Below, in pieces: positions 42,045-57,613 of a stretch of DNA of 64,000 bases. A program made the translations under genes and the position numbers. The notes under the pieces are model-generated. The model made no database searches. It saw nothing but the letters and a program-made list of their open reading frames with translations, and was not told the origin of the DNA. Each line of letters starts with the position of its first letter. The stretch's first letter is position 1. The DNA is taken from the IMG/VR virus record IMGVR_UViG_3300036760_000522, positions 186,001 through 250,000 of that record; one strand, 5' to 3'.

Positions 42045-43003
42045 TCGTAGAGTGGATCTGGCCGGTATTCGACGGTAGTCGGTGAAAAACGCACGTAAGG
42101 AGTTGTCACGTCTTGCTCGCTGTAACTCGTGTTCATCAAACCCCGATCAATAACCGACAGACTGGGCTCGTGATCCGGCAGCTGAGATTGTGTGTTGACC
42201 AGATTACCTCCGTCACCCCGATAGTAATCAGCCCGCGCAACAGGACTCTCGCTGTCGTTCGGAAGAAAGCCAAACGAATGCCGACTGTCACTCATGGGTG
42301 AAGACTCGTGTGTCGGAGGGACATCTTGCCCCGGCTGCTGCGACACAGGGCCCCAGTACCCGTAATCAATTCCTTGTCCTCGGGCACCATAGCCCATACC
42401 AAAATCCCACGCGTCAGTTGGAGTTTCGTCCCACGCGTCATCAGGAACGGTCGATGTGGCAAAATCCAAACTGGACCAAACCTGATCGTCTTCCGAAAGA
42501 GGATCCCCACAACAACCGGCTGTCCAATCGTAACGGTACGAAGCCTCCTTAGGTCTCGACTTGTTGTTGGAATTCTCCGTGTCCTGCAAAACTTTCTCGG
42601 ATCTTTCAGGTCGGTTACGAAGGTCTTCAGACTCTTCTACGAAAAGCTCAATGTCCTTCTGATCATCCGATGGAAGCTCCTTCAGTTCAGCCTTCCAATG
42701 AGGTGCATTGATTTCGTCGTGTAGGACGTCCGTAGCAGCACTCAAATTCTCACACGCCTGGTTCAACATGCGCCGGACGTCTTGCACGCTCGAGACGTAG
42801 CCACGTCCACCAATCAGCCCATCTGGACTGACTGTGGAGCTCTTGATTCGACTAAAATGGCGATACGCCGACAGTGCGTGGCCTAGACCCACGCTGGCCG
42901 CCCACAACGTCCTTGCAAGAGGTTTGAGAGATCGCGAAGCAAACGGGTAATCCTTTGGGATCTGTCGTTTCAACGCTGTCGGAGGCGGAGGTTGCTCAGG
43001 CAT
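42026..43003 (-). CDS. Hypothetical protein with acidic low-complexity C-terminal half
   Basis: 325-aa ORF. Confidence 0.75.
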   Translation of the reverse strand: MPEQPPPPTALKRQIPKDYPFASRSLKPLARTLWAASVGLGHALSAYRHFSRIKSSTVSPDGLIGGRGYVSSVQDVRRMLNQACENLSAATDVLHDEINAPHWKAELKELPSDDQKDIELFVEESEDLRNRPERSEKVLQDTENSNNKSRPKEASYRYDWTAGCCGDPLSEDDQVWSSLDFATSTVPDDAWDETPTDAWDFGMGYGARGQGIDYGYWGPVSQQPGQDVPPTHESSPMSDSRHSFGFLPNDSESPVARADYYRGDGGNLVNTQSQLPDHEPSLSVIDRGLMNTSYSEQDVTTPYVRFSPTTVEYRPDPLYDWPQET

Positions 43004-43235
43004 TCGACTCCTTCAGTGGGGCTCCGTTGTCCTGAAATAGGCGCTCAATATACAGGTCTCCGCCGTCACGTCGGATCCCCCATAAATCTCGTGATGCTAA
43101 ATTGACTAGCGTGTCGGCTGATACTCGCCGAAAACCGTTCAAGTCAGGGATCGTTGCGACCTTTACACGTGTTGTCACACGTGTTGGGGCACTAAGAAAG
43201 CTGTCGAAGCTTGTAGTCGAAAATTCGATCCTCAT
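42996..43235 (-). CDS. Small hypothetical protein
   Basis: RDLWGI...YIERLF; overlaps both neighbours. Confidence 0.7.
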   Translation of the reverse strand: MRIEFSTTSFDSFLSAPTRVTTRVKVATIPDLNGFRRVSADTLVNLASRDLWGIRRDGGDLYIERLFQDNGAPLKESNA

Positions 43236-44137
43236 GTAACCACCAGTCGAACCAAAACGTCCACGTAGTTGTTCAAACTGTACCCAGAAACACGAAGTGT
43301 CTCCTCGTACGTCCCAGGCAACAACCCATCAACAGGCTCAACCAAAATACTCACGGCCTGTACCCCTGCCGTCACTGTACCAGACACAGGCGTGAACGAA
43401 GAAAGCCACGAGAGCGACAGGCCCGTCAATCGAGCTACTTGAAACTCGAGAACCGAGCCCGAAGCCCCGGTGTTCGACACATTGAACTGCTGACTAGGAA
43501 CTACCGGGAACGGTCCGCTTATTGGACGTACGACGCTGAATTGAACCAACGGCGTCGACAACACAATGACAGCCTTGGGCCTCACAGTGATGAGCACAGG
43601 AACCGCCTGTGGAGTGTTCAGAGCTGTTGGGTCCTGCACAGTAATCATCCCGGAATAGGGGCTACTGGAGGCCACCAAGTCCGTGGAATCGACGGCCACA
43701 CTGAACGACCCTGACTCATTGGATGCTAAATTTCCTACCGAGCCTGGCGTAGCTTGAATGTACGGTGCCGACGAAGTTAGGACGGCGTTCAACAACGAAC
43801 CAAATGTGCCACTGTTGGCGACCGAGACCGTTTGGGCCACTGACAGTCCGCGACCTTCATCAACAGCGAACCCTAGAGACGTTGGAGGTCCAACCAAGAT
43901 CTTCGGTTTGTAGGTCGCCTTGAGTGTGTCAATAGACTCGCTCATCGCTTGAACCACCTCACCAGGCAAAGGTGTCGTATCGCGAAACAACCCAAACGGC
44001 GTCACGATCTCAACAACGGAGTACACAGGGTACGCGCCCGTGACATCCAGTCTGGTCTTCCAACGCCAGACGCGTCCTGCGACAGTAGTGCTAAATCCTA
44101 CGTCCTGAACGCTGATACTGGCTGCCGAGATCGCCAC
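43232..44137 (-). CDS. Structural protein with two BACON/Ig-like domains
   Basis: Repeated QTVSVANSG...L / QQFNVSNTG...L and YSGMITV / YEETLRV. Confidence 0.75.
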   Translation of the reverse strand: MAISAASISVQDVGFSTTVAGRVWRWKTRLDVTGAYPVYSVVEIVTPFGLFRDTTPLPGEVVQAMSESIDTLKATYKPKILVGPPTSLGFAVDEGRGLSVAQTVSVANSGTFGSLLNAVLTSSAPYIQATPGSVGNLASNESGSFSVAVDSTDLVASSSPYSGMITVQDPTALNTPQAVPVLITVRPKAVIVLSTPLVQFSVVRPISGPFPVVPSQQFNVSNTGASGSVLEFQVARLTGLSLSWLSSFTPVSGTVTAGVQAVSILVEPVDGLLPGTYEETLRVSGYSLNNYVDVLVRLVVT

Positions 44138-44168
44138 AAACTCGGCAAATGAACAAACGAATTAGTGA

Positions 44169-44438
44169 TTACGCAACGGCGTCAGCCGGGCAGCCCTCAC
44201 AGGGCGTGACCGGCAAGGGTCCAAATTCTGGAGCGTTACGGTCGTCGTCAGTCGTCTCGAACCACATCTGACCAACCCCAAGCGCACCCAAACCACCCCT
44301 GAGAATGTGCTTACCTGTCTTGCACTTAGCGTGAACGAAATGTCCTTGTCCGTAAAAGATGCGCGGACCATTCACTTCAACGTCGAGGGCTTTCGCAACT
44401 CGAATACTGGAGGCTTCCAAAGAATCAGCAGTAATCAT
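44169..44438 (-). CDS. Small Cys/His-containing protein (89 aa)
   Basis: Start reassigned to ATG 44438, 1 nt after the upstream stop. Confidence 0.55.
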   Translation of the reverse strand: MITADSLEASSIRVAKALDVEVNGPRIFYGQGHFVHAKCKTGKHILRGGLGALGVGQMWFETTDDDRNAPEFGPLPVTPCEGCPADAVA

Positions 44439-44439
44439 G

Positions 44440-45102
44440 TCACTCACAGACGTTTCCACCCCTATTTGCCCACTGGGGCAAAGAGACGGCGCGCAAGATA
44501 TTAAAATTTTTCGCAGCAATAGTGCTGAAAATCTTCTCATACGGAACGTACTTTGAATCTTCTTCGGCCGCGCCTTTCAAGCGATCAACAGCACGAAAAA
44601 AATAGTGACGCACACCACTCTGTGGGATGCTCAGGCGCAAAGCCACTTCAGACTGACAGGTAGTCTGCCACATGCCCACCAAAATGTTGACGTCTCGAGA
44701 ACTGAACAGCGATGACAAGTCAGTACGCATGTCCTCTTCCGTGACCTGCGGTATGCTCAACAAGAATTTTAGCCGCTTGATCCCGCGAGCAAGTCGGTAG
44801 CTGACAGCCGCTTGTGTCACTTCGAAGATCGCTGCAATGTCGGCCTGCTTCTTCCGCAAAATGTAGTAGAGCAAAATCAAATCGGCCTCACGCCCCGGGA
44901 TACGATCCAACAAAGGCATGATTTTCTCTTCATACGAACTGGTGGCAAAGAACGCTTCCAAATCCTCGGTACTGACGCCCTCGATAGAATCAGCGTCGAC
45001 ACTGTCACCTGTGTCGTCAGCAAAAAAGGCGTCGTCTTCAGACGAGAATCGGGTAGCCAATCTCATCGGATCAATCGGGATCACATATCCGGCAGTACTC
45101 AC
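44440..45102 (-). CDS. Tandem sigma-70 region-4-like HTH protein (phage transcription factor)
   Basis: LDRIPGREADLILLYY...KQADIAAIFEVTQAAVSYRLARG plus a second HTH CQSEVALRLSIPQSGVRHYFFRA; GGAGG SD. Confidence 0.75.
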   Translation of the reverse strand: MSTAGYVIPIDPMRLATRFSSEDDAFFADDTGDSVDADSIEGVSTEDLEAFFATSSYEEKIMPLLDRIPGREADLILLYYILRKKQADIAAIFEVTQAAVSYRLARGIKRLKFLLSIPQVTEEDMRTDLSSLFSSRDVNILVGMWQTTCQSEVALRLSIPQSGVRHYFFRAVDRLKGAAEEDSKYVPYEKIFSTIAAKNFNILRAVSLPQWANRGGNVCE

Positions 45103-45122
45103 GTGCTTACCTCCACGAAGAA

Positions 45123-46973
45123 TTAAATCGCAAGTGACGACATGTAGTCTTGCGAGTCGTTACCAACCACAACATCCGACTGCGGAAAGAACGCAGACAA
45201 CAAACCTTCAAACTGTATGCCAATGGACTGCAAACGTTTGGTGGCGGAGGCCTGATCAGGCTCCGCAGAGATCGTTGTTACGTCCACATCCTGTAGGGAC
45301 ATCAGTTCCAGATTCAACTTGACGGTCGACTCCGCAGTCTGCAAACGAGCGTACTGTGCCTTGGTCACAGACGCCAGCCCGGACTGATAGATCCTGTCAA
45401 CAGAGCCATAGGCCTTCAAGAGATCCGTGAGTACTTTCTTCGGCACTCGACAGACTCCGCTCAAATTATCACTCGTGTCGCCAAACATGGCTCGCAATTC
45501 GAGCATTTTTCCGGGAGGTACACCAAAACGACGAGATACCTCCGCAGAATCAAAGAGCACTTCATTACGTGCGCCCGTAGCTGGCACCAAAACGTGTGTA
45601 CGGTCAGTAACCAACTGTAGAAAATCCCGGTCCGATGAAAAGATGAGGTTGTTTTGATCAACCAGATCGCGCCTCACCAAAGTCGCAATCACGTCATCCG
45701 CCTCCTCAGCAGGGTTCCAGTGTTGTCTGACCCCTACAACGGGTAGCAGCGTGCGCAGCGTAGCAACCACCCACGAGATGTCCTGGGACTTCCTCGTGGC
45801 CTTGTAGGCAGCATATCGGGCCTTGCGACGTGCTGAGGACCCGTCCCACGCCACCCGCAAGGCTGCGGTCGAGTAACGCTTTCGAAGGGAATCCAAGCTG
45901 CGCAAAAATCCAAGGACGGCTCCGGACGGCTCCCCTTGATGAGTCAGGGTGTTCAGCCCTTTAGCGTAGAAGCAACGGTACGCCAAGGCGTGACCGTCTA
46001 CGATGACGTTGTGTATCAACTTCCCTCCATCCTCTTGTTGTGACGAGAACTGTCGTGACAAGTTGTCGACCTCTTCCCAAAGTTTCTGCAAACGATCAAC
46101 TATGCTCGCCACGTGTTTTAGGTGGCGCCACCACTGACGTATCGTTCGCAAGCCAGTATCAGACAAGCGATACGCGACGACAAACGTGCACAACAAATGT
46201 CCACGACTCTCCAGACGATGGAGACGGTTGTAGTCATCGCAATCACGATGCAACGACTGCCATTGCTGTCGAATCGTGGTATCAAAAGCCAGGAATCCGC
46301 ACAAATAACGCCCAGAAACGTACCACTGATTGACGGATCGGTAATCCCTATAAACATTCACCAGAAAATCTGGCGTCAAAGAGTTCCAACAGAAAATCGC
46401 TCGGGTGTCACGAGTCCACTTCAGCAAAACATCAATACGATCGCGCTGATTGGACCACGTGGCTCGCTCCACAACTTGCAAGGCAGAACGAGGGATCGTC
46501 AACAAGGCTTCCTTGGACCTCAACTTGAGACGAACTTGCACCATGTCGCGTTCCGGTATCTCCTCGTGAACGTCAGCTTGCAAGCCATGATATATGCCTG
46601 TAGTGATCACGACGACGTCGCCGATGCCTATGCCCTGATCCGTGAAAGTGCGGATCTGATTTTGCAATTTCTCTACAGCGTCATCACTTACAGTTGATAG
46701 AGTTCTATTATGTCCTGGTTTCACCAGAACAGAAGTCACGAATTTGGTGCCCTCGAGTTTGAAAAAATCATCAGTTCGACGACGCCCGTCAAGTCTGACA
46801 AATGCGTAGCCGTCCACCAAATACTGATAGGTTCGGCTGCCGCCGACTACAGACACAGCAGCCGGAACAAATACCTCAGCACCCTTCAGTGATCGTGTAA
46901 TAGCGTCCGAAAGGATCTTGGGGTCCTCTTGCTCACCACGAGCGCTCAACTCCAGGACTACCCACTCGCCCAC
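45123..46973 (-). CDS. NusG-family (NGN + KOW) domain fused to a Pol I-type 5'-3' exonuclease/flap endonuclease
   Basis: EWVVL...EVFVP...LVDGYAFV and IGDVVVITTGIYHGLQA (NusG/KOW); IVDGHALAYR, EADDVIA, SSDRDFLQL, GDTSDNL (5'-3' exonuclease). Confidence 0.85.
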   Translation of the reverse strand: MGEWVVLELSARGEQEDPKILSDAITRSLKGAEVFVPAAVSVVGGSRTYQYLVDGYAFVRLDGRRRTDDFFKLEGTKFVTSVLVKPGHNRTLSTVSDDAVEKLQNQIRTFTDQGIGIGDVVVITTGIYHGLQADVHEEIPERDMVQVRLKLRSKEALLTIPRSALQVVERATWSNQRDRIDVLLKWTRDTRAIFCWNSLTPDFLVNVYRDYRSVNQWYVSGRYLCGFLAFDTTIRQQWQSLHRDCDDYNRLHRLESRGHLLCTFVVAYRLSDTGLRTIRQWWRHLKHVASIVDRLQKLWEEVDNLSRQFSSQQEDGGKLIHNVIVDGHALAYRCFYAKGLNTLTHQGEPSGAVLGFLRSLDSLRKRYSTAALRVAWDGSSARRKARYAAYKATRKSQDISWVVATLRTLLPVVGVRQHWNPAEEADDVIATLVRRDLVDQNNLIFSSDRDFLQLVTDRTHVLVPATGARNEVLFDSAEVSRRFGVPPGKMLELRAMFGDTSDNLSGVCRVPKKVLTDLLKAYGSVDRIYQSGLASVTKAQYARLQTAESTVKLNLELMSLQDVDVTTISAEPDQASATKRLQSIGIQFEGLLSAFFPQSDVVVGNDSQDYMSSLAI

Positions 46974-46976
46974 AAG

Positions 46977-48404
46977 TTACACGCCTGTTGCCAGAGTGGT
47001 GTGGAACTGCCAAAATTTCAGACGCCATTCCGGAGGCGTCAAAAATCCTTCTCGTGAGAGGACTTTAGGCTTCGGCACTGGATCCGTCTTCTGTCCTCGT
47101 GACGCTTCTCGAGGAACAGCCACTACATCCATGGATGTCAACGCCTGCACATCAGGGGATCCCAAATTTCCGATCCCGTCTGCACGCAACCCAGTCACTG
47201 TAGGCGCCGCCACGACAAGCTTGGCCGGATTGTGTTGTGGCAGTGCTGGCGTCGACTCTTTAGCTGTCGGTTCCTTAGCTGTCGACATTGCTGTAGGTGC
47301 AGCTGTCGACACAGGAGCAGGTATTGTAGGTGCAGCCACAAAAAACACAGGAGCCTGTTGCTGCGCTGGTCTGTCAGGAGCGCCAGAAGCACACAAGACT
47401 GCATCGCAGATCAAACTTGATCGTGTAACACGTCCAGGCTTCATCAAGTATTCAACCAAACGGATCACGCCGGCTTGATACTTAGTCCAAACACGAGCCG
47501 CCAAGTCACGATCGACGCGTGAGTAGTCAGCTACCATATTGTTGGCCAGACGAAAGCTATTCATCGCAGCCTCAGCCAAGCCCTCAGAAACTGCGTCCGG
47601 AGAAACACGGTCACAGATCTCCTCAATCAACTGTACCGCTGTGGAGGTGTCGCCAAGAGCCAGTAGGATCTCATAGTACCGTGTAACATCCGACAGATTC
47701 AAGTGCTCACGTGCCGAAGTCAGTGTGACAGGACCCAACTGGGCTAGCATCTCCAACGTGTTTAGAGCGTCACGCACATGCCCCAAGGAGTGGTCCACCA
47801 CCGTCCACACAGCGTCGTCTTCGTACGTCACACCCTCTTGAGTAAGAACCCACGTAAGACGTGCAAACACGTGTTCCCGAGTGATCCTCCGAATCTGATG
47901 CTCCTCACAGCGGGAACGGATCGGTGCCCGTATCTTGTCAGGTTCCGTAGTGCAGAAAATACCTACTAGTAGTTTGTCTTCCAACGGCTTCAGCAAAACG
48001 TCCTGGGCATCCCGACTCATGCGATGAACTTCGTCGAAAATGTAAATTCGTTTTGACGCGCCTGCGACCAGAAACGGCAGACTATCGACAATGGCTCTGA
48101 CATTGTCGATAGTGCCTCGACTAGCAGCGTCCATCTCCTGCAAAGCCGGGGCAGTCTCATTCAGTGTATCGAGGCAGTTTTCACACTGATTGCACGGCTC
48201 AGAGTCCTCAGTTAGGGCCTGACACAACAAAGCGCGGGCCAGGATGCGGGCCAGGGTTGTTTTGCCGCGTCCAGCTCCTCCACTGAAAATGTAGCTCGTG
48301 TCGAGCCCTGTGCCTCGACGCAAACGCGACTTCAGGACTTGGACGGCTCCCTCTTGGCCGAGCACGTCGCTGAACCGCAGCGGCCTGTACCTAACATCCC
48401 ACAT
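46977..48404 (-). CDS. dnaX: DNA polymerase III gamma/tau clamp loader
   Basis: RYRPLRFSDVLGQ, GGAGRGKTT, CNQCENC, DEVH, IRSRC. Confidence 0.92.
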   Translation of the reverse strand: MWDVRYRPLRFSDVLGQEGAVQVLKSRLRRGTGLDTSYIFSGGAGRGKTTLARILARALLCQALTEDSEPCNQCENCLDTLNETAPALQEMDAASRGTIDNVRAIVDSLPFLVAGASKRIYIFDEVHRMSRDAQDVLLKPLEDKLLVGIFCTTEPDKIRAPIRSRCEEHQIRRITREHVFARLTWVLTQEGVTYEDDAVWTVVDHSLGHVRDALNTLEMLAQLGPVTLTSAREHLNLSDVTRYYEILLALGDTSTAVQLIEEICDRVSPDAVSEGLAEAAMNSFRLANNMVADYSRVDRDLAARVWTKYQAGVIRLVEYLMKPGRVTRSSLICDAVLCASGAPDRPAQQQAPVFFVAAPTIPAPVSTAAPTAMSTAKEPTAKESTPALPQHNPAKLVVAAPTVTGLRADGIGNLGSPDVQALTSMDVVAVPREASRGQKTDPVPKPKVLSREGFLTPPEWRLKFWQFHTTLATGV

Positions 48405-48416
48405 CGCTGGCAGTGG

Positions 48417-48926
48417 TCAGGAAGACTGTAAGAGGTCGCTGCTGCCGTTTGTCTCTTGATCGGCTTCCTGTAAGCTATCAGTCGACAAGAACGAAATGTC
48501 GATCTTCTGTGCAACGCTCACAAACCCTGTCAGCTGATCATGCCAGGCACCGTGCCGCTCCAGGATCTTTTGGAACTCGGCGATGTCTGGCTCACGAAGC
48601 TTCCAGGTCATCTCCCCTGTTTCTTCGTCTTCTTCACCTGTACAGCGTTCCAAGTAGTGGTCAACTAACGCGGTGCGTTGATCTGCATCAAGAGTTTTCC
48701 AGACGTCCGCCGCGATCTCGATGACGAAATCACAATCCAGAGCCCATTCCAAGAAGCCACTGATCCGCCGGGATTTTCCCGGGATCGGGCGGCCATTCTT
48801 ATCGGTCGATGCCTCACTTACAAAAACGTACATCAAACGGGCATCTGCCAACTCAGAGTGGTATTTTGGAATCAACGCCACCGCAACCTTCTCCACAGCT
48901 TCACCTTCAGACCAAACTTTCGACAT
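48417..48926 (-). CDS. Putative phage metallopeptidase-like protein (degenerate metal site)
   Basis: DFVIEI...W...QRTALVDHYLERC...PDIAEF...ERHG; AAGGAGG SD. Confidence 0.7.
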   Translation of the reverse strand: MSKVWSEGEAVEKVAVALIPKYHSELADARLMYVFVSEASTDKNGRPIPGKSRRISGFLEWALDCDFVIEIAADVWKTLDADQRTALVDHYLERCTGEEDEETGEMTWKLREPDIAEFQKILERHGAWHDQLTGFVSVAQKIDISFLSTDSLQEADQETNGSSDLLQSS

Positions 48927-48941
48927 AATTTGAGACCTCCT

Positions 48942-49637
48942 TCAAATCGACACAACACCAGCACCAGCAAAAAGTCGTCGCAATTCGGCGTCACCAAGTT
49001 CCTCCCACAGCTCGCCGGGATCTTTGGTCATCCCGCCTCGTTTTCTGGCCACGCGCAAACAGACGTCGTGTATCCGGAACTCCGAGCCGTAATGATCCTG
49101 AAATCTCCGCACAGCCCGCCTACCCTCCAAATCCGCATCAGCTAGGAGGACTATGTCCGAAACCATGCGTCGGAGAAATCTGAGCATCAGGCGCGACGGA
49201 GACAAGCCAAGGACCGCAGCTGTCTCCGGGAACACGCGCTCAACAGGGAAGAAATCAAAGACACCCTCAACCAACACAGCGCGTTGTGCTGCCCAAATTA
49301 TCGGAGCCGTAACCCCTAAGCCAAACGAGCACAACACGTTGCGATCCACCACATAGTCGTGGTACCCGCGAACAGCTTGGTCGATGCTTCGAAACTGAAA
49401 TCCTCGCACACACCCAAGAGCATCCGTTAGGGGAAAGAGGAAAGCGTTGTCCAGCTTTCGACCCGCCCACCACAGCTGAAACTCCTTCGGCACGAAAGAG
49501 GGCAGAGGGGAATTCAAAAATCCCACTTGATGCCGAACGATCTGATCGTTTGACGCACCTCGTGCCCACAGGGCTTCCTGTGCCTGTGTTCCATCTAAGC
49601 CCTGAGCATGGTGAACAAGATCATCTAGCCAGGTCAT
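48942..49637 (-). CDS. DnaG-like primase catalytic/Toprim domain without zinc-binding domain
   Basis: FLFPL...GFQFR, LVEGVFD, ADAD, KDPGE. Confidence 0.8.
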   Translation of the reverse strand: MTWLDDLVHHAQGLDGTQAQEALWARGASNDQIVRHQVGFLNSPLPSFVPKEFQLWWAGRKLDNAFLFPLTDALGCVRGFQFRSIDQAVRGYHDYVVDRNVLCSFGLGVTAPIIWAAQRAVLVEGVFDFFPVERVFPETAAVLGLSPSRLMLRFLRRMVSDIVLLADADLEGRRAVRRFQDHYGSEFRIHDVCLRVARKRGGMTKDPGELWEELGDAELRRLFAGAGVVSI

Positions 49638-50771: not shown

Positions 50772-51455
50772 CTACGCTCGACGCAAAACGAGATGGGTAC
50801 CATCAGAGACCTCTTCCTCTTGACACCGGTAAGCCGAGTGTGCGTGATCCAGAAAAGCGGTCTTCTGTGTGACCAGAAGGACGTCGAAACCAAGACGGTC
50901 CGCTAAATCTCGAATGAAACGCCCCGCGGCGTCAACGTAGTCGTCAGACACAGCTGCCAACGACTCATCTAAGATCAGAAATGGCCAAAGCTTCAATTTC
51001 TTGATCGCCAAGATTCTCAAGATCAAAGATACCACGGAACTAGGGCCTCCTCCGAAGGAGTCCAAAGGGGGTCCGACATGTGAAAAAGGGTCGTCTAGAG
51101 TACCTCGACGTATAGCGAACTCGACTGAAATCTTGTTGTACTTCGGACCAACATCCGACTCCAAACTGAGATTCAGGTCGTGGAACACTGTGTGTAAGCC
51201 TTCCGTCGCCACACGCTCTACAGAGCGAACTTGTTGGTTGACGAGCTGATCCATCAAAATGTGGAACAGCTCACCGACCTTGGACAGAATCTCGATCTCT
51301 GCGTCCAAATCGCGGATTTTTTTCGCACAAGAATCTGCATCAGATTGTACGGAGTCACGCAAAGTGTGTAGCTTGACGGCTTTCTGTACGACCAGATCTG
51401 TGCGCCGCGTGAGATCCGCTACGTCATGGACGTTGTGAAGCGCGACACTTGACAC
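50772..51455 (-). CDS. sbcC: SbcC/Rad50 C-terminal half (signature motif + Walker B)
   Basis: Coiled coil, then SFGGG, FLILDESLAAVS, LLVTQ. Confidence 0.8.
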   Translation of the reverse strand: MSSVALHNVHDVADLTRRTDLVVQKAVKLHTLRDSVQSDADSCAKKIRDLDAEIEILSKVGELFHILMDQLVNQQVRSVERVATEGLHTVFHDLNLSLESDVGPKYNKISVEFAIRRGTLDDPFSHVGPPLDSFGGGPSSVVSLILRILAIKKLKLWPFLILDESLAAVSDDYVDAAGRFIRDLADRLGFDVLLVTQKTAFLDHAHSAYRCQEEEVSDGTHLVLRRA

Positions 51456-52693
51456 AGGTGTGCTCCCTCTTGTCCTTCAGTAGGAACCACCAATTTTCCT
51501 GACTCCGTCAAGTGATACTCATCCACTGTACAAAAGGCCAAACGAGTCGAACTTTTTTTCTCCTCAGTGCCGGTGGTAGCAGCAGCCTTGGACGGTATCA
51601 GCAATGCACGAAGCTCCACCAAATGGCTCTTGGACTTGTCAAATAGAGACAAAAAACTACGAATGTTGATGTTAGAAGCAAACGTGGGTTTCTCTGCCTG
51701 CCGGACAGGATCTGTCTCGACGGGCATGCTCGTCACAACATCCGAATCCAAACTGCAACGAAACAGCAGCTTTGAATCTTCGTACGTGACTCGCACCTTG
51801 TCTTGTGGACGGTCCCCGAACTCTGCAATCATCTGCCGCAGCACTCGAACAATCTGGTCCCGAGGCACACGCAGAATGAACTTGGCGTATTCGTCCGGCG
51901 GATAGCCGTAGCGACTATGCTCTTGAACGTGCCTCGTCCAACCAAACACTGACTTGATCTCGGACGAGCCGGGGACCTGGTCTTTCGCGAAACACATCCG
52001 CTCTTCAACCTGAACACGGACTGTCGGAGAACACTTGGACAAGTAACTGATCAACATAGGGACATGGTGCGCATGGATGCCAAACCCTTTGTCCTTCAGT
52101 GACGGACTGTGAAAATGACAAACACGTTGTCCGTCCGCTGCAAAAAAAGTGCCGTTACCAGATGCGTACTCTGCACGAGCACTGTCGAACAACTGTGCAA
52201 CACGCAACGGATTCGACTCATCGGTGCCGTCAGGTGCCAAGTAGTCCGCCACCTGTGACAAGGCTTCCCGCAAGAGTACTGTCGAGAACACGTAATCCGT
52301 ATCCTGTGCGCTTCTCTTGATACTCGTAAATGCAGATTTATAGAAATCTGGATCATGTGACGATCTATCAGCGGTGACGCCCTCCTCGGTACGATACTTC
52401 ACCCAATGGCGGTCTCCGTCCTTGCCAGGCTCAATCTCAATCCAACCGTTCAAATGCTTCAAAGCTTCGACACGATCAGCCGGCCACGAAAACATCATGG
52501 CGCCTTCACCATCAACCATTTCGCACGGTATGGACACTCGAGAGTAGTGAAAGCGGTCCTGAGAATGCACCAACATCTGGTCATCCTGTGTAGTAAACAG
52601 GTAGGCTTTCTCGTGGTCCACACTCAAAGGCTTGACTACCGAGACACGGTTCAAAGCCTCATTCAGATCCTTCAGCTGTACCCTGACCTTCAT
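51419..52693 (-). CDS. DNA polymerase III beta sliding-clamp-like protein
   Basis: Starts MKVRVQLKDLNEALNRV; FFAADGQRV; three-domain size; DnaX nearby. Confidence 0.65.
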   Translation of the reverse strand: MKVRVQLKDLNEALNRVSVVKPLSVDHEKAYLFTTQDDQMLVHSQDRFHYSRVSIPCEMVDGEGAMMFSWPADRVEALKHLNGWIEIEPGKDGDRHWVKYRTEEGVTADRSSHDPDFYKSAFTSIKRSAQDTDYVFSTVLLREALSQVADYLAPDGTDESNPLRVAQLFDSARAEYASGNGTFFAADGQRVCHFHSPSLKDKGFGIHAHHVPMLISYLSKCSPTVRVQVEERMCFAKDQVPGSSEIKSVFGWTRHVQEHSRYGYPPDEYAKFILRVPRDQIVRVLRQMIAEFGDRPQDKVRVTYEDSKLLFRCSLDSDVVTSMPVETDPVRQAEKPTFASNINIRSFLSLFDKSKSHLVELRALLIPSKAAATTGTEEKKSSTRLAFCTVDEYHLTESGKLVVPTEGQEGAHLCQVSRFTTSMT

Positions 52694-52968: not shown

Positions 52969-53836
52969 ATTTTTTCTTACACCCAAACGAGTAGTCACAA
53001 AACTGGCACTGCTGACGCGTCGGCTTAGGCACGAAGACCTGATCAGGGTCCTCTCCGTCGGCTAGATGGCGTAACAGTCCACGAATCTCTACAACAACAC
53101 CAAGAGTGGCCTCGTAGAGGTCGTCTAGATCATTTTTTACAGGCTCGTACCAATCAACGCTTTCTGGTGGCCAATATCTCCAGAAAACAAAACCCACACG
53201 ATCTGGCACGTAACCATAGCGACGCTCACAGAGCATTGCGTACCAAGCTAGCTGTTTGGGGTCTTCGTACTTCTCACGCCAGCGAGACCCCTTACCATCC
53301 AAGATCACACGATCGTTGTTGGGCCGGGTCCTGTGCATCATGAAGTCAGACCGTCCTGCAAGAGTTGCGGCCGGGAGACGCAAATCCAACTTGTGCTCAA
53401 CGCGAACTTTTTTGCCGAGTAACCTGTAGTGTCGAATTATCTGGAGACCACGAGCGACTGTGGCCCGCACATCCGACATAAGTTCATTCAGGTCAACGTA
53501 GAGCGCTTTGGGATGCTCAGCGTCCCGCCAACCTAAGTACGCCTTAGGACTCCCGTCCTTGTCCTGTGTGCGATAACGTATCGTGCGCGTCACGGTCTCG
53601 TCGACACGTGCCAATAGCCAAGCTGTGGCGTCAGCGTCCCGCCAACCCTCATCGACATAAAATCTGCCGAACAGGTTCCCCACGGCGTCCCCATAAAGGG
53701 TCGCAAGTGTATCTGGCAACCCGGGCAAAATCGTACCGTTCACGTAACGATGCCAATAAGCGTAGGGACAGTTCCCGTACAGCCTTCGACCGGAATACGA
53801 GATGTACCCGTCCCAAAGACCGTCAACTCTGATCAT
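52934..53836 (-). CDS. PD-(D/E)XK (RecB/AddB/Cas4-like) nuclease with 4-Cys cluster
   Basis: ISYS...CPY, GRSDF, ILDGK, QLAWYA, CQFCDYSFGC. Confidence 0.85.
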   Translation of the reverse strand: MIRVDGLWDGYISYSGRRLYGNCPYAYWHRYVNGTILPGLPDTLATLYGDAVGNLFGRFYVDEGWRDADATAWLLARVDETVTRTIRYRTQDKDGSPKAYLGWRDAEHPKALYVDLNELMSDVRATVARGLQIIRHYRLLGKKVRVEHKLDLRLPAATLAGRSDFMMHRTRPNNDRVILDGKGSRWREKYEDPKQLAWYAMLCERRYGYVPDRVGFVFWRYWPPESVDWYEPVKNDLDDLYEATLGVVVEIRGLLRHLADGEDPDQVFVPKPTRQQCQFCDYSFGCKKKYDARTDSSQGR

Positions 53837-54804
53837 GAAGCAATGCGAGCCCGTTCCAGATAGGCCAACGCACGTACCCGTACCTCTGGTGCAAAATCTA
53901 GCTTCTCGACACTCGTCACGAAGTCATCATCCGCGGATGTTTCAAGCTCCGTCTCAAGCTGTTTCACAAACTGATTGATCACAACAACCTGTTGGTCTTC
54001 TCTGGTCTTCCGATCGAAGTCAAAGACTTCTTCAGGCGGAGCCACAGTAAGAGGAATGTCCTCCACCTCAATGCCGTCCTGTGTGATCGTCAGGACAGCT
54101 ACCTTCGGCACGCGATTGATGTTCTCGTGCGTCAATGCTCCTCGAGACACAGCGCCTTGATTGACGAAGATTCGACCATTCAAACTTACAATGCCTTGAT
54201 CCCGATGCCAATGACCGAAACAAAATACATCCGGACCGCCTTCGTAGATGAGAGTCTGATACCGGAAGACTGGCTCGCCAAAGAACTCCTCGACGTGTGC
54301 CGGCGGATTCTCGCCGGCCAACGCGTGGACCACCGCAATCAAATGTGTGTCCCCCGGTTGCTTTCGTATTGCCTGGATCTCTTCCACCGTCCGATGAGCA
54401 CTATACGGAACGCCCACTACACGCACTCTCAAACCACCGTCCTCGAAGACGACGTCACGGAGATGGCGAAAACAGGTCTGATACAAGACACCCAACGGTT
54501 GCTGAGATATCGTATCCAAATTATCCCCGACGACATCGTGGTTACCCTCAACGCACCAGACAGGGCACGGGTAGTTCGCGTGTAGCTCCAACACCTTCAC
54601 AACAAGTGCGTGAGATGTCCTGGACGCGGTCTTAACGTGAATAAAGTCTCCGCCATCCAAAACAGCCACAGCGCGACGTGCCTTAGCAATCTCTCCGATT
54701 TGTGTGAGGCTAGACAGAATCTCGGCCAGATAGTCCCCCTTCCAACTAGGAGGTGAGCGGTCAGCGGCGTGTACGTCAGTACGGTAAACAAAAACCAGAC
54801 TCAT
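53833..54804 (-). CDS. sbcD: SbcD/Mre11 metallophosphoesterase nuclease
   Basis: TDVH, GGDF, GNHD, VVH, GHWH, NQGAVSR. Confidence 0.88.
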   Translation of the reverse strand: MSLVFVYRTDVHAADRSPPSWKGDYLAEILSSLTQIGEIAKARRAVAVLDGGDFIHVKTASRTSHALVVKVLELHANYPCPVWCVEGNHDVVGDNLDTISQQPLGVLYQTCFRHLRDVVFEDGGLRVRVVGVPYSAHRTVEEIQAIRKQPGDTHLIAVVHALAGENPPAHVEEFFGEPVFRYQTLIYEGGPDVFCFGHWHRDQGIVSLNGRIFVNQGAVSRGALTHENINRVPKVAVLTITQDGIEVEDIPLTVAPPEEVFDFDRKTREDQQVVVINQFVKQLETELETSADDDFVTSVEKLDFAPEVRVRALAYLERARIAS

Positions 54805-56156
54805 GCGACCTCGCTATGGACGTGCACGACCGTAATGATTTGTCCGCACGTCGGACAAACTCCGAGTTCCTTCATCTCCTGATCAAGCCGACGAAACTCC
54901 GACTCGTGGTTAGACAGGTCTTGTGACAGTTTATGGATCGTTCCAGTAAACTCGGTAAACTTGATCAACATGCGACCAATAGCTTGCAATTGTCTGGCTT
55001 CAGCTACCAAAGCCGACGGTTCCGGAGGAATGGCCAGATTCGATGTGGACAACAATCGGCGATAAGTCTGTGCACGCAGACTCAACGTTTCCAAGAACCT
55101 GCCAACTTGGGTCAATTCTCGCGCCTGCTGTTGAACACCGTCGTAAACCGGCAAATCACACGTAGCTGGACCCTCGGCCGCAGCAACTGTCGACGTCAGA
55201 GTCCTATGAAGAGCTTCGAAAACCACCACGAGACGCAAACACCTTGAAGCTTCTCGTATAGTGTCTGGAACCTCGATGCGAGGAGACAGTGCGCGTTCAA
55301 CGTTGCCAACGAAACTGTTCAAGCGCTCTGAGCTAACCGAGTAACCGTGGACCTGTCGAACCGCCTGATCAAGATCTCGAACCTGATAGTAATGAGGGAC
55401 CTTGGGTCTCAAAGCTTTCGTGATCGCTTCGTACCAACGCTTCAAAATCAAGGCGCGGTCCAGAAACGAAACTACGACCCCGACACGTTCACGTGCAGTA
55501 TTTACTGCCTGCTGCTGTTCTCGCACAGCTTCAACAGGTACTTGATCGAGGCCTACATAGCGTGTGAGTCTTCCGTTGTAGTCCGCAAGATCCTCGCATC
55601 GGACACGTCGTTCTGAAACTGCCGACTTGCGATCCTTAGAAACCAAAGATGACGCCGAGTTGATTCCGTCCAAACGAGCCACGTCACTCAAGACATCCGC
55701 GACCACAGGTCCAGACTGGTCCAGTAAGAAGACAGGCTCGAACTGTTTGGCAATCTGGATCAGCTCCTTGCTGGTCCCGATACGAACGGTGCGAAAGTCT
55801 GGCAACAGAAAGTCAGGTGTTCCGCGCTCCAAGCCCTCATACACATCCGTCCGACCGTTCCGCGTCACCGTATAGCGGTTCTCTGAATCTCCCTTGGCCC
55901 AAACCACTTCGATCTGAGAGGTCTTGACTCGAACCGACGCAAAGCAGCGGCACTTCTTGGCTCCACGTAGGCGACGTTCACACGTCAGGCCATGTCTGAC
56001 GAAGGAGGTCCCCACCGCGCCTGTCAACGCGTATCGTAAGGCCCGAGCAATCGCACTCTTGCCGGTGTTGCTGCGACCAACGATCGAAACGAATCCTTGT
56101 ACCACCAAACGGACATGTGTGATGGACTGGAAGTTGTTGACCTCGACTTCGATCAA
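54801..56156 (-). CDS. sbcC: SbcC/Rad50 N-terminal half (Walker A to zinc hook)
   Basis: VNNFQS, GRSNTGKS, Q-loop, terminal CPTCGQ. Confidence 0.85.
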   Translation of the reverse strand: MIEVEVNNFQSITHVRLVVQGFVSIVGRSNTGKSAIARALRYALTGAVGTSFVRHGLTCERRLRGAKKCRCFASVRVKTSQIEVVWAKGDSENRYTVTRNGRTDVYEGLERGTPDFLLPDFRTVRIGTSKELIQIAKQFEPVFLLDQSGPVVADVLSDVARLDGINSASSLVSKDRKSAVSERRVRCEDLADYNGRLTRYVGLDQVPVEAVREQQQAVNTARERVGVVVSFLDRALILKRWYEAITKALRPKVPHYYQVRDLDQAVRQVHGYSVSSERLNSFVGNVERALSPRIEVPDTIREASRCLRLVVVFEALHRTLTSTVAAAEGPATCDLPVYDGVQQQARELTQVGRFLETLSLRAQTYRRLLSTSNLAIPPEPSALVAEARQLQAIGRMLIKFTEFTGTIHKLSQDLSNHESEFRRLDQEMKELGVCPTCGQIITVVHVHSEVA

Positions 56157-57613
56157 GTTTCCTCTAGAGGCGCTAACAGATCATCCTCGTCAACTGCGTC
56201 CGCAACCTCTTCAACTTCCACCTCCACATCTGACCCATCGTCCCCATCTGCATCCATGCCAAGGCTCGACAAGAGGGCGTCATCCTCGCTCACAACAGTG
56301 TCTTCCGGTTCAGGCACTAACATGTTGTCACTGTCGTCACGAATCGCTGTAAGAACCAGAGTTTTCAGTTTCTCGAAAGATGCAGAATTCTGAATCAGGT
56401 ATTCTCGCAACTGCTCGCGTCCCCTGAAAGTATGGTCGGCGTACACGTAAGAAGATCCCGCCTTCTTGACAAGGCGATTGACCACCGCGGCTTCAATCAA
56501 ACTGTAGTGGTCGTCGTAACCATGGTTGAATCGAATGAAGACTCCTGCGACGCGCCCCTCCATAGCGTCTAGCTTCGACTTAACCACACGCACCCGTGTG
56601 TGGTTTCCGTACGGATAGTACACGTCCTTGCCAGTCACCTTGTCTCGGCGTTTGATACGCTCTGATTTCGTGCGGTTAAAACTCAAGCGCAAATAGGCGT
56701 AGAACTTCAACGCTTTCCCGCCAGCTGTGTTGGTATCCATCTGCGGGGCCCCGTAGCTACCGCCCCCAATCAACGATCTGGTTTGGTTTACCAGGATGAG
56801 TGCCATGCCCGTTGGAGACAACTTAGTGCTGCCCAACAACGCCGCAAGTTTTGGTAACGTATCTGAAAGTCCTCTCGCGCGAGCACCGATGGTAGCGTGT
56901 TCGTCGAGTCCCTTCTCGAGTTCGGACCTCGGAACCATGGCTGCAACAGAGTCAATCACGGCCAAATCACAACCCTGACGCATGGCCATTGCCAACAACT
57001 TCCAGCTCTCTTCCATCGAAGTCGGTTCGTAGTGCAGGAGTCGCTCCTCGAGATTGACGCCTATTTTTCGAGCATACCTGGGATTGAGAGCATGCTCGTG
57101 ATCCAGATACAGGCACCAACCCCCCTGTCGTTGACACGCAGCAATAGCTTCGAGGGCAGCGGTTGTCTTACCGCTCGCCTCAGGCCCAAAGATCTCAGTG
57201 ATCTTGCGTCGCGGATACCCGAGACAAATGGGCTTTCCGTTTTCCGCTAGCGTGCCGCCAATCAAGTGATCCAGAAGAAATGAACCAGAAGAAACAGAAG
57301 CGTAATTGTCACTGTGTTTGACTACTGCCTTAACCCCTGTTCGACGTTGTATTTCAGTGCGTGCAGCAGCAACCTGCTTCGCGGATTCCGCAGCACGCTT
57401 ACGTTGATCCGTCAATACCACCTGATCGGACAACGGTGAACGTGTGTTTTTGGGCTTAGCAGGCACAGGTTTCTTGTCGACTACCTCCTGCACTGCGGCT
57501 TTCACAGGTTTCTTCGCAGCATTTACTGATTCCAATTTCACTTCCTTATGGGGAACGGTCTCAACAGGGACCGACGAACTCCTCACAGAGCTGAACAACT
57601 TCCTAGCAGCCAT
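56153..57613 (-). CDS. recA: RecA recombinase with basic N-terminal and acidic C-terminal extensions
   Basis: EIFGPEASGKTT, VIDSVAAM, ILVNQ, GGKALKFYA. Confidence 0.95.
   Translation of the reverse strand: MAARKLFSSVRSSSVPVETVPHKEVKLESVNAAKKPVKAAVQEVVDKKPVPAKPKNTRSPLSDQVVLTDQRKRAAESAKQVAAARTEIQRRTGVKAVVKHSDNYASVSSGSFLLDHLIGGTLAENGKPICLGYPRRKITEIFGPEASGKTTAALEAIAACQRQGGWCLYLDHEHALNPRYARKIGVNLEERLLHYEPTSMEESWKLLAMAMRQGCDLAVIDSVAAMVPRSELEKGLDEHATIGARARGLSDTLPKLAALLGSTKLSPTGMALILVNQTRSLIGGGSYGAPQMDTNTAGGKALKFYAYLRLSFNRTKSERIKRRDKVTGKDVYYPYGNHTRVRVVKSKLDAMEGRVAGVFIRFNHGYDDHYSLIEAAVVNRLVKKAGSSYVYADHTFRGREQLREYLIQNSASFEKLKTLVLTAIRDDSDNMLVPEPEDTVVSEDDALLSSLGMDADGDDGSDVEVEVEEVADAVDEDDLLAPLEET

What the first reader, a model, noticed from the sequence alone, without database searches (positions are those of the whole stretch)
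45123..46973. NusG transcription-elongation domain fused in frame to a 5'-3' exonuclease
Seen: NGN+KOW (about aa 1-160), a helical linker with ~38-aa periodicity, then a complete Pol I-type 5'-3' nuclease. An internal GGAGG followed by TTG at 46019 could also yield the nuclease alone. Known: NusG paralogs bind elongating RNAP, and these nucleases remove RNA primers, flaps and RNA in hybrids. Inference: an RNAP-tethered nuclease (R-loop removal, torpedo-like termination, host shut-off, or replication-coupled late transcription), or a recent stop-codon loss joining two genes.
Basis: partly seen in the sequence, partly recalled or inferred. Interest (0 to 1): 0.74.

Follow-up and report, generated by a model that had tools for sequence, protein, structure and literature searches.

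The report
NusG paralog fused to flap endonuclease
A clade of huge sediment and soil bacteriophages makes one 616-residue protein that joins a NusG-type RNA-polymerase elongation-factor module, through a long helical stalk, to the phage's only replication flap nuclease; I found no paper describing this architecture, and it may physically couple late transcription to DNA replication.

Summary
Window 45123-46973 (minus strand) is one 616-aa ORF: NGN (aa 1-111), KOW (112-172), a fast-evolving helical hairpin (173-318), and a complete Pol I-type 5' nuclease (319-~590) with every catalytic carboxylate. A C-terminal clamp-binding-like motif follows.

It is not an artefact or a recent stop-codon loss. 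Hundreds of 600-680-aa homologues at 36-50% identity keep the same architecture. All lie on viral contigs of up to 529 kb, in the same gene block: clamp loader, this gene, tandem sigma-region-4 protein.

It did arise by joining neighbouring genes. Distant relatives have NusG-like and FEN genes separate and adjacent. Two IMG/VR loci and about a fifth of close cluster representatives have NusG+stalk without FEN. More distant relatives have NusG-like directly next to the sigma4 gene, with no FEN at all.

The family profile matches NusG over both domains (E 1e-9). A complex prediction gives weak support (0.47 against controls of 0.00) for docking on the RNAP beta' clamp helices.

The proposed internal TTG sits in a column that is start-capable in 38 of 41 homologues, but the GGAGG is not conserved.

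An RNAP-tethered nuclease is plausible but unproven. Independent modules remain a strong rival.

The parts
46641..46973 (-). NGN domain (aa 1-111) of a phage-specific NusG paralogue. It contains the invariant L52, G55, Y56 and F58 ('LVDGYAFV', the counterpart of NusG 'FPGYVFV').
   Evidence: Family profile against PDB NusG 2lq8, E 1.1e-9. Pfam NusG in 36 of 39 members. TIGR00922 in 39 of 39. AF2 pLDDT about 90. The predicted interface with beta' 278-294 uses residues 52-56.
46458..46640 (-). KOW domain (aa 112-172), a five-stranded barrel.
   Evidence: Pfam KOW in 31 of 39 members. NusG KOW chains 1nz9 and 2mi6 matched. AF2 strands 120-169.
46020..46457 (-). Helical stalk (aa 173-318): Trp-rich, fast-evolving, 146-200 aa in homologues, predicted as a long helical hairpin.
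   Evidence: AF2 helices 175-194, 201-269 and 272-313, pLDDT 56-87. Mean column identity is 27% here against 57% in the N-terminal module. No credible PDB homologue. BLAST-undetectable beyond near relatives. In L048 and L051 it belongs to the NusG-like ORF.
46017..46028 (-). GGAGG (46028-46024), a 4-nt spacer, then TTG codon 319 (46019-46017): a candidate internal start that would give the nuclease alone (298 aa). It is the relic of the ancestral FEN start codon.
   Evidence: Sequence read directly. The column is ATG in 31, GTG in 5 and TTG in 2 of 41 homologues. It coincides with the FEN start in split relatives. The SD-like motif is not conserved.
45285..46007 (-). Pol I / FEN-type 5'-3' nuclease (aa 323-563: PIN-like domain plus H3TH/SAM fold) with a complete acidic active site.
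   Evidence: Pfam. Taq alignment. Foldseek to M. smegmatis FenA, E 1e-16, TM 0.77. Invariant D326, D377, E424, D426, D427, D448, D450, D499 and D502.
45186..45209 (-). C-terminal tail motif E589-G-L-L-S-A-F-F596 (family consensus [IL]-[IL]-x-x-F-F after 'I-Q/N-P'). It resembles a sliding-clamp-binding (beta-motif or PIP-like) peptide.
   Evidence: Conserved in fused and split FENs. F595 is at least 90% conserved. Binding was not tested.
46977..48404 (-). Upstream neighbour: clamp loader (DnaX/gamma-like AAA+). Its stop lies 3 nt before the GTG start.
   Evidence: Pfam DNA_pol3_delta2 8e-23, PHROG clamp loader 1.5e-51. Synteny in all loci.
44440..45102 (-). Downstream neighbour: 220-aa protein with two sigma-70 region-4-like HTH domains and no region 2. 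It is the constant partner of the NusG-like gene across the wider family.
   Evidence: Pfam Sigma70_r4_2 1.6e-11. FliA and SigF sigma4 in PDB. It lies next to the NusG-like gene even without a FEN between them.
51419..52693 (-). Phage-encoded divergent beta-type sliding clamp, the likely partner of the nuclease's C-terminal motif.
   Evidence: AF2 model with Foldseek: the top 50 hits are all beta clamps, E 1e-16. Atlas features 0.94. Profile hit to 1vpk, E 0.0036.

Best explanation
SHOWN. This is an old, conserved gene fusion specific to a clade of huge (about 100-530 kb) phages. It joins three parts:
(i) a phage-specific NusG/Spt5-family module (NGN+KOW);
(ii) a ~150-aa helical hairpin stalk that first evolved as a C-terminal extension of that NusG paralogue;
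(iii) the phage's only flap endonuclease, which is catalytically intact and carries a clamp-binding-like tail.
The gene sits between the clamp loader and a tandem sigma-region-4 protein, at the border between the replication module and the late (terminase, portal) genes.

INFERRED.
- The phage has no detectable RNA polymerase of its own. The NGN therefore docks on the beta' clamp helices of host RNAP and, with the sigma4-like neighbour, drives or protects late transcription of the long co-directional gene array.
- The stalk holds the nuclease on the elongation complex. There it can act on 5' flaps, RNA-DNA hybrids (R-loops) or transcript-primed or collision intermediates on replicating phage DNA.
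- The C-terminal motif links the same molecule to the phage's beta-type clamp.
- Initiation at the conserved start-capable codon 319 probably also supplies free nuclease for ordinary Okazaki-primer removal.
For: Conservation and synteny:
- More than 600 homologues; the best 120 are 591-662 aa and cover 92-99% of the query.
- 49 of 51 IMG/VR loci have NGN-KOW and FEN in one frame, flanked by the clamp loader and the sigma4 gene.
- Only viral clusters were found. No fused copy was found in 185,579 species genomes.

Domain identity.

Origin from neighbouring genes, with the stalk belonging to the NusG side.

Only FEN in the genome:
- The 974-aa Pol A lacks a 5' nuclease domain.
- The genome holds a single FEN match.

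No phage RNAP: no Rpb2_6 or T7-type RNAP match.

Late-module position: terminase and portal lie downstream.

NGN-beta' docking: ipSAE 0.47 against a best control of 0.00, verdict 'weak support'. That mark was reached by 51 of 78 solved complexes and 2 of 108 mismatches, but passes at or below 0.60 are more often wrong than right unless the guess was likely beforehand. The interface is beta' 278-294 with NGN 6, 8, 52-56, 83-106, which includes invariant L52, G55 and Y56.

Internal start:
- 38 of 41 sequences have a start-capable codon at column 319.
- 7 of the 10 non-ATG codons are GTG or TTG, against about 25% expected.
- This is not seen at the other conserved Met columns.

Clamp side: tail motif and a phage beta clamp.
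Against: - Covalent linkage is not obligatory. L048 and L051 keep NusG+stalk and FEN as separate, overlapping ORFs. About 14 of the 72 closest cluster representatives are NusG+stalk proteins without FEN motifs.
- The wider family pairs the NusG-like gene with the sigma4 gene and has no FEN between them. The ancestral role of the NusG module is therefore nuclease-independent.
- As the sole FEN, the nuclease must also serve the replisome.
- RNAP binding has only weak, possibly memorised, computational support, and that against E. coli beta' because the host is unknown.
- The stalk model has only moderate confidence. No activity, expression or interaction data exist.
- The SD-like GGAGG before codon 319 is not conserved. 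This genome uses SD motifs rarely.
Confidence: 0.45

Rival explanations
1. Independent modules. The NusG paralogue (with the sigma4-like protein) regulates late transcription, and the FEN processes Okazaki fragments at the clamp. The fusion is a tolerated by-product of overlapping neighbouring ORFs, where one indel is enough. At most it gives co-expression or stoichiometry. The flexible stalk lets each end work alone, and internal initiation or proteolysis may separate them.
For: - Split and fused forms interconvert within the clade.
- ORFs overlap by 26-44 nt in split forms, so one indel fuses them.
- NusG-like/sigma4 pairs exist with no FEN between them.
- The FEN is the only one in the genome and carries a clamp-binding-like tail beside a clamp and clamp loader.
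- A conserved start-capable codon sits at the FEN boundary.
Against: - The fused state dominates: 49 of 51 IMG/VR loci and about three quarters of close cluster representatives, across 36-50% identity. That argues for selection, or at least for no cost.
- The stalk keeps its length and helical character although its sequence drifts.
- NusG-FEN adjacency already existed before the fusion, in the stalk-less outgroup.
Confidence: 0.32
2. Clamp-coupled late-transcription activator, analogous to T4 gp55/gp33/gp45.
- The NGN occupies the beta' clamp helices (the sigma2/gp55 site).
- The tandem sigma4 neighbour occupies the beta-flap (the sigma4/gp33 site).
- The FEN end, through its flap or nick recognition and clamp-binding tail, connects RNAP to sliding clamps loaded on replicating DNA.
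Late genes would then fire only on replicating templates.
For: - The gene block holds a beta-type clamp, clamp loader, NusG-FEN and sigma4x2, directly upstream of terminase and portal.
- The NGN is predicted on the beta' clamp-helix tip (weak support).
- The sigma-like partner has region 4 only.
- The nuclease has a conserved hydrophobic C-terminal motif.
The T4 mechanism itself is cited from my own knowledge. It was not retrieved here.
Against: - No homology to gp55 or gp33.
- NGN domains are elongation factors, not initiation factors.
- Clamp binding is untested.
- Relatives without a FEN between NusG-like and sigma4 would need another clamp link.
- The genome has other weak sigma region-2 matches (E 0.005-0.03, below the family cut-off) elsewhere.
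Confidence: 0.12
3. The NGN-KOW module has been repurposed and does not bind RNAP. It targets the nuclease to another partner (primase, helicase, SSB, ribosome) or to nucleic acid.
For: The module is very divergent. Every NusG-subfamily model scores far below its cut-off. The window's own NGN is below the Pfam threshold. The gene lies in the replication module next to the clamp loader and a Toprim primase-like gene.
Against: - The hallmark NGN strand motif is invariant and forms the predicted beta' interface.
- The constant genomic partner is a sigma-like transcription protein.
Confidence: 0.07
4. Assembly or annotation artefact, or a very recent stop-codon loss peculiar to this genome.
For: None beyond the a priori possibility. 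Two related loci are split.
Against: - Hundreds of independent fused homologues from many samples.
- A 95%-identical fused copy in another IMG/VR record, L005.
- A roughly 93%-identical contig from another sediment run spans 44400-46452 with only one in-frame 3-nt indel.
Confidence: 0.01

Closest known systems
Specialised bacterial NusG paralogues (RfaH, LoaP, UpxY, ActX/TaA) and housekeeping NusG
   Same: - Two-domain NGN+KOW core, with the conserved 'GY-FV' strand.
- Family-level sequence and fold matches.
- Encoded at the head of a long co-directional gene array, as specialised paralogues typically are (review PMC7819879, section 'Diversity of the NusG Family').
   Different: - Scores far below every subfamily cut-off (at most about 2e-11, against equivalog thresholds of 100-145 bits).
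- Virus-encoded.
- Carries a ~150-aa helical extension and, in most members, a covalently attached nuclease.
- The review text holds no occurrence of 'nuclease', 'fused' or 'fusion'.
Pol I N-terminal / stand-alone bacterial and phage flap endonucleases (Taq 5' nuclease, M. smegmatis FenA, E. coli ExoIX, T5 D15, T4 RNase H)
   Same: - PIN-like plus H3TH fold and a full set of metal-binding carboxylates.
- Sits in a replication module.
- Sole FEN of a phage whose Pol A lacks this domain, as in T4, T5 and T7 (my own knowledge).
   Different: - N-terminally fused to a transcription-factor module and stalk.
- About 25-29% identity to solved relatives.
- Has its own conserved C-terminal [IL][IL]xxFF tail.
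Phage T4 late-transcription machinery (gp55, gp33, gp45 clamp, gp44/62 loader)
   Same: Resemblance of logic only. Clamp, clamp loader, an RNAP clamp-helix binder, a flap-site (sigma4-like) binder and a clamp-binding tail are encoded together, upstream of the late genes.
   Different: - No sequence homology.
- The clamp here is beta-type, not gp45-type.
- A nuclease is part of the chain.
- Nothing is experimentally shown.

Membership tests
NusG/Spt5 superfamily | N-terminal NGN alpha/beta domain | tested here: met
   Family profile aligns to T. maritima NusG residues 9-169, E 1.1e-9. Pfam NusG in 36 of 39 members. AF2 pLDDT about 90 and Foldseek NusG hits at E 5e-9 and 5e-8. The window's own sequence alone is just below the Pfam gathering score (18-21 bits against 22.2).
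NusG/Spt5 superfamily | C-terminal KOW beta-barrel | tested here: met
   Pfam KOW in 31 of 39 members. PDB NusG KOW chains 1nz9 and 2mi6 matched. AF2 strands 120-169.
NusG/Spt5 superfamily | NGN binds the RNAP beta' clamp helices | tested here: inconclusive
   Complex prediction against E. coli beta' 235-345: ipSAE 0.47, best control 0.00, verdict 'weak support'. The interface is the clamp-helix tip (278-294) with invariant NGN residues. It may reflect memory of solved NusG-RNAP complexes. The host is unknown.
Named NusG subfamilies (housekeeping NusG, RfaH, LoaP, UpxY) | Score above the NCBIfam curated cut-off for the subfamily model | tested here: not met
   Window protein: RfaH 21.6 bits against 144.5, UpxY 19 against 100, nusG 16.9 against 135.7. 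The best family member reaches only E 2e-11. It is a separate paralogue family.
5'-3' exonuclease / FEN (Pol I N-terminal type) | PIN-like N domain plus H3TH/SAM C domain above Pfam thresholds | tested here: met
   PF02739 108.7 bits (cut-off 34.3). PF01367 44 bits (cut-off 40). Foldseek FenA TM 0.77, E 1e-16.
5'-3' exonuclease / FEN (Pol I N-terminal type) | Conserved metal-binding carboxylates | tested here: met
   D326, D377, E424, D426, D427, D448, D450, D499 and D502 align with the Taq VDG, FD, EADD, DKD and GDESDN motifs. All are invariant in 40 sequences.
5'-3' exonuclease / FEN (Pol I N-terminal type) | Structure-specific 5' nuclease activity | not testable with these tools
   Needs a biochemical assay.
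Sliding-clamp client proteins | Short C-terminal hydrophobic clamp-binding motif that binds the clamp pocket | tested here: inconclusive
   The motif [IL][IL]xxFF is conserved in fused and split FENs, and the phage encodes a beta-type clamp.
T4-type clamp-activated late transcription | Homologues of gp55 and gp33 | tested here: not met
   Pfam and PHROG scans name NusG, KOW, FEN and sigma70_r4 only. No gp55 or gp33 family was reported. The resemblance is one of logic only.

The most novel reading that the evidence does not exclude
The NusG-stalk-FEN protein, the tandem sigma4 protein, the phage beta clamp and its loader together form a replication-coupled late-transcription machine.
- A NusG-type NGN replaces sigma region 2 at the beta' clamp helices.
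- The sigma4-like protein takes the beta-flap.
- The flap nuclease end, bound to the sliding clamp at nicks or flaps of replicating DNA, serves as the mobile activator or tether.
This would be a convergent, non-homologous counterpart of T4 gp55/gp33/gp45. It would also be the first case of a NusG-family protein wired directly to the replisome.
Probability: 0.12. Interest if true: 0.9.

Novelty: new variant of a known kind. Interest (0 to 1): 0.62.

Why it matters
NusG/Spt5 is the only transcription factor family conserved in all cellular life. The review read here (PMC7819879) describes paralogues that consist of NGN plus KOW and act by recruiting other proteins.

A large, virus-only family in which a NusG module is permanently joined to a DNA/RNA 5' nuclease would be a new way of using this factor. 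An enzymatic activity, rather than a ribosome or Rho, would be delivered to the elongation complex.

The protein is also the phage's sole flap endonuclease and sits between the clamp loader and a sigma-like gene. It therefore offers a concrete, testable handle on how huge phages without their own RNA polymerase coordinate late transcription with replication, remove R-loops or settle transcription-replication conflicts.

The natural split, stalk-only and fused variants are ready-made comparisons for experiments.

If the two halves prove independent, the family still defines a new phage NusG paralogue with a constant tandem-sigma4 partner.

Tried and rejected
- Nucleotide and protein searches of 50,697 deposited phage genomes found no close relative. 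Only the nuclease half matched, to SPO1-like and other phages at no more than 31% identity.
- Seven literature searches were run (NusG with exonuclease, flap endonuclease, jumbo or huge phages; 'phage-encoded NusG'; 'NusG paralog'). Six found no relevant paper. The seventh found a NusG review that does not mention nucleases or fusions. Absence from this library does not prove absence from the literature.
- A profile of the stalk against PDB gave only coiled-coil noise (dynactin p50, E 2e-4 and weaker). I rejected these hits as compositional.
- A conserved internal Shine-Dalgarno is rejected. Many homologues have no SD-like motif before the conserved ATG. In this genome GGAGG precedes only 3% of predicted starts, against 1% of background positions.
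- The promoter and terminator scan of 43000-49000 gave counts no higher than shuffles.
- No phage RNAP (Rpb2_6 or T7-type) and no Pol III alpha was found. The T7-type search had no positive control.
- Pfam beta-clamp models missed the clamp. It was found only by structure.
- Read laying gave little. The source run's contigs were mostly filtered out. One relative's contig confirms continuity across 44400-46452.
- The host was not identified.
- The complex prediction returned only 'weak support'. It is reported as such and is not counted as proof.
- The first FEN-motif regular expression was too strict. It mislabelled fused proteins as 'long noFEN', so I used length classes instead.
Full report
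WHAT IS THERE

The window is part of a 301,550-bp virus record with direct terminal repeats and 53% G+C. It was assembled from a sediment metagenome.

The finding's coordinates hold one uninterrupted ORF on the minus strand, 45123..46973. It is 616 aa long and starts with a GTG placed 3 nt after the stop of the upstream gene.

Pfam places the two halves of a Pol I-type 5'-3' nuclease at aa 323-484 (E 3e-31) and aa 485-563 (E 3e-11). It gives a sub-threshold NusG NGN match at aa 21-103 (18.1 bits against a gathering score of 22.2).

IS THE N-TERMINUS REALLY NusG-LIKE?

Yes, at family level.

- An alignment of 39 homologous N-termini (A2) gives a profile that matches T. maritima NusG across both NGN and KOW (2lq8, E 1.1e-9). 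It also matches eight further NusG chains at E below 0.01, and isolated KOW domains.
- 36 of 39 members hit Pfam NusG and 31 of 39 hit KOW.
- All 39 hit TIGR00922. Most also hit UpxY, LoaP and RfaH, but far below every curated cut-off. It is therefore a separate paralogue family.
- The AlphaFold2 model (mean pLDDT 86.7) has a confident NGN (1-111) and a KOW barrel (120-169). Foldseek retrieves NusG chains at E 5e-9 and 5e-8.
- The family-invariant L52, G55, Y56 and F58 correspond to the NusG 'FPGYVFV' strand.

THE NUCLEASE

- The closest solved folds are M. smegmatis FenA (E 1e-16, TM 0.77), E. coli ExoIX, the Taq 5' nuclease and T5 D15.
- The alignment to Taq pairs D326, D377, E424, D426, D427, D448, D450, D499 and D502 with the Taq acidic motifs. 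All are invariant in 40 sequences. The enzyme should be active.
- The phage's family-A polymerase (974 aa) has no 5' nuclease domain.
- The genome holds only this one FEN. It must therefore also be the replicative primer- and flap-removing enzyme.
- After the H3TH domain comes a conserved tail, I-Q/N-P-x-x-[IL]-[IL]-x-x-F-F (E589-F596 in the window). Many members have a second terminal motif, G-F-x-K-[TS]-[ST].
- The tail looks like a clamp-binding peptide, and the phage has its own clamp. The 424-aa ORF at 51419-52693 was missed by Pfam. It models as a beta-type sliding clamp: the Foldseek top 50 hits are all beta clamps, at E 1e-16.

THE LINKER

- Residues 173-318 are predicted as three helices (175-194, 201-269, 272-313). 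They form a long hairpin at moderate confidence.
- The region is Trp-rich and 146-200 aa long in homologues. Its mean column identity is only 27%, against 57% for the N-terminal module.
- BLAST cannot follow it beyond near relatives.
- It has no meaningful PDB homologue.
- A 36-38-residue periodicity shows weakly in 4 of 8 members but not in the window's own protein.

IS THE FUSION REAL AND CONSERVED?

Yes.

- The 5.8-billion-protein search found more than 600 homologues. The best 120 are 591-662 aa, 39-50% identical, and cover 92-99% of the query. JGI's automatic name for them is '5'-3' exonuclease/transcription antitermination factor NusG'.
- IMG/VR yielded 198 related loci. In 49 of the 51 loci that carry the family, NGN-KOW and FEN are in one frame. 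These lie on contigs of up to 529 kb.
- The ESM-Atlas cluster (161 members) is 100% viral.
- A scan of 185,579 species genomes returned only cellular Pol I nuclease domains among its best 80 matches, and no fused copy.
- A contig from another sediment run, about 93% identical, spans 44400-46452 with a single in-frame 3-nt indel.
- I found no paper describing the architecture.

HOW IT AROSE

The gene block is constant in every locus that reaches far enough: PhageMetallopep, clamp loader, NusG-like, FEN, then a protein with two sigma region-4-like domains. Three further architectures exist.

(a) L059, L070 and L074 are the outgroup clade. A 207-212-aa NusG-like gene and a 315-334-aa FEN gene are separate but adjacent, or overlap by 4 nt. 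There is no stalk.

(b) L048 and L051 have NusG-like plus stalk (298 and 380 aa, ending in basic tails) and FEN as separate ORFs. The ORFs overlap by 26-44 nt in different frames. Among the 72 closest 50%-identity cluster representatives, about 53 are fused-length and 15 are 270-420 aa without FEN motifs. At least one of those 15 is a truncated fused protein.

(c) Further out, 160-220-aa NusG-like genes lie directly next to the sigma4x2 gene with no FEN between them. In L164 that sigma4x2 protein is 54% identical to the window's. L166 and L167 show the same arrangement.

A tree of the concatenated NGN-KOW and FEN columns, rooted on clade (a), gives a 100%-supported stalk-bearing clade. L048 and L051 nest inside the fused sequences with weak support (83-86). 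A secondary fission is therefore likely, but a single origin of the fusion is not excluded.

Covalent linkage is favoured, yet it is not obligatory.

THE INTERNAL START

TTG codon 319 (46019-46017) is preceded by GGAGG with a 4-nt spacer.

- The aligned column is ATG in 31, GTG in 5 and TTG in 2 of 41 homologues.
- After a structural Met in the FEN, it is the most 'start-capable' column in the whole alignment.
- 7 of its 10 non-ATG codons can start translation. About 25% would be expected from Val and Leu codon usage.
- The conserved Met columns at positions 490 and 558 show nothing similar.
- Counted as independent events this is roughly 5 of 7, p about 0.01 by my own binomial estimate.
- The column coincides with the FEN start codon of the split relatives.
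- Against this, SD-like motifs upstream are not conserved, and the genome rarely uses them.

I rate production of a free nuclease from this site as plausible, at about 0.35. It is not shown.

MECHANISM

Shown: the domain identities, the conservation, the synteny, the origin and the intact active site.

Inferred: that the NGN binds host RNAP.
- No phage RNAP was found.
- The complex prediction of NGN 1-112 with E. coli beta' 235-345 scored 0.47 against 0.00 for three controls. The contacts lie at the clamp-helix tip (278-294) and at NGN residues that include the invariant 52-56.
- The tool's verdict is 'weak support'. Passes at or below 0.60 are more often wrong than right unless the guess was likely beforehand, and such a pass may reflect memory of solved NusG complexes.

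The gene lies at the border between the replication and recombination genes and the terminase/portal late module. It sits within a long co-directional run of about 47 genes. That is where a processivity or antitermination factor and a sigma-like activator would be expected.

The best-supported working model is therefore a NusG-type late-transcription factor that carries the phage's flap nuclease on a helical stalk. This places the nuclease at transcribing RNAP, where it could act on R-loops, flaps or transcript-primed or collision intermediates. Through its tail the same molecule would be linked to the sliding clamp.

The main rival is that the two ends work independently and the fusion is merely tolerated. 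The split variants and the FEN-less NusG/sigma4 pairs keep that rival strong.

A bolder reading is a T4-like, clamp-coupled late-transcription device built from non-homologous parts. The evidence does not exclude it, and I give it about 0.12.

VERDICT

This is a new, virus-specific architectural variant of the NusG family joined to a known nuclease type. Its function is untested.

Noticed in passing
window 51419-52693 (-): A 424-aa ORF with no Pfam or PHROG hit is a divergent beta-type sliding clamp. AF2 gives pLDDT 70.9 and pTM 0.72, and the Foldseek top 50 hits are all bacterial beta clamps at E 1e-16. It is conserved in L002 and L003.
   Followed up: yes
window 44440-45102 (-); L164 3005-3607; L166 2751-3107; L167 4523-5281: A 220-aa protein has two sigma-70 region-4-like HTH domains and no region 2. 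It is the constant neighbour of the phage NusG-like gene, even in phages with no FEN between them (54% identity in L164). It is likely the functional partner of the NusG paralogue.
   Followed up: partly
window 32642-33727 (-): A 5-hmdU DNA kinase helical domain (Pfam HMUDK_hel, E 6e-96), with ThyX at 62217-63149. The phage probably hypermodifies thymidine in its DNA.
   Followed up: no
L048 3670-3680: In the split relative L048, the overlap between the NusG-stalk ORF and the FEN ORF contains an A7 run (CAGAAAAAAATG) right at the FEN start. Transcriptional or ribosomal slippage there could also yield a fused product. L051 has no such run.
   Followed up: no
L003 1-1077: The Mre11-like phosphoesterase of this relative is called as a 735-aa product with a faint LAGLIDADG hit. 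The window's version (53833-54804) is 323 aa. This may be an intein or homing-endonuclease insertion.
   Followed up: no
window 46970-46989: A roughly 93%-identical relative in another sediment run (X4) has 149 nt in place of 18 nt between the clamp-loader stop and the NusG-FEN start. The tight coupling of the two ORFs is therefore not universal.
   Followed up: no
window 1153-7641 (-): A very large ORF (2162 aa) lies at the left end of the window. It was not examined.
   Followed up: no
window 56153-57613 (-): The phage RecA (Pfam RecA 1e-49) is 486 aa, with an N-terminal extension of about 80 aa. It is flanked by a RuvC-like resolvase, an SbcCD-like pair, a PD-(D/E)XK nuclease and a RecD2 helicase, which together make a full recombination module.
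   Followed up: no
G000:C1:263150-264279: Two ORFs (414 and 246 aa) outside the window give weak sigma-70 region-2 matches (E 0.005-0.03). They may be further phage sigma factors.
   Followed up: no
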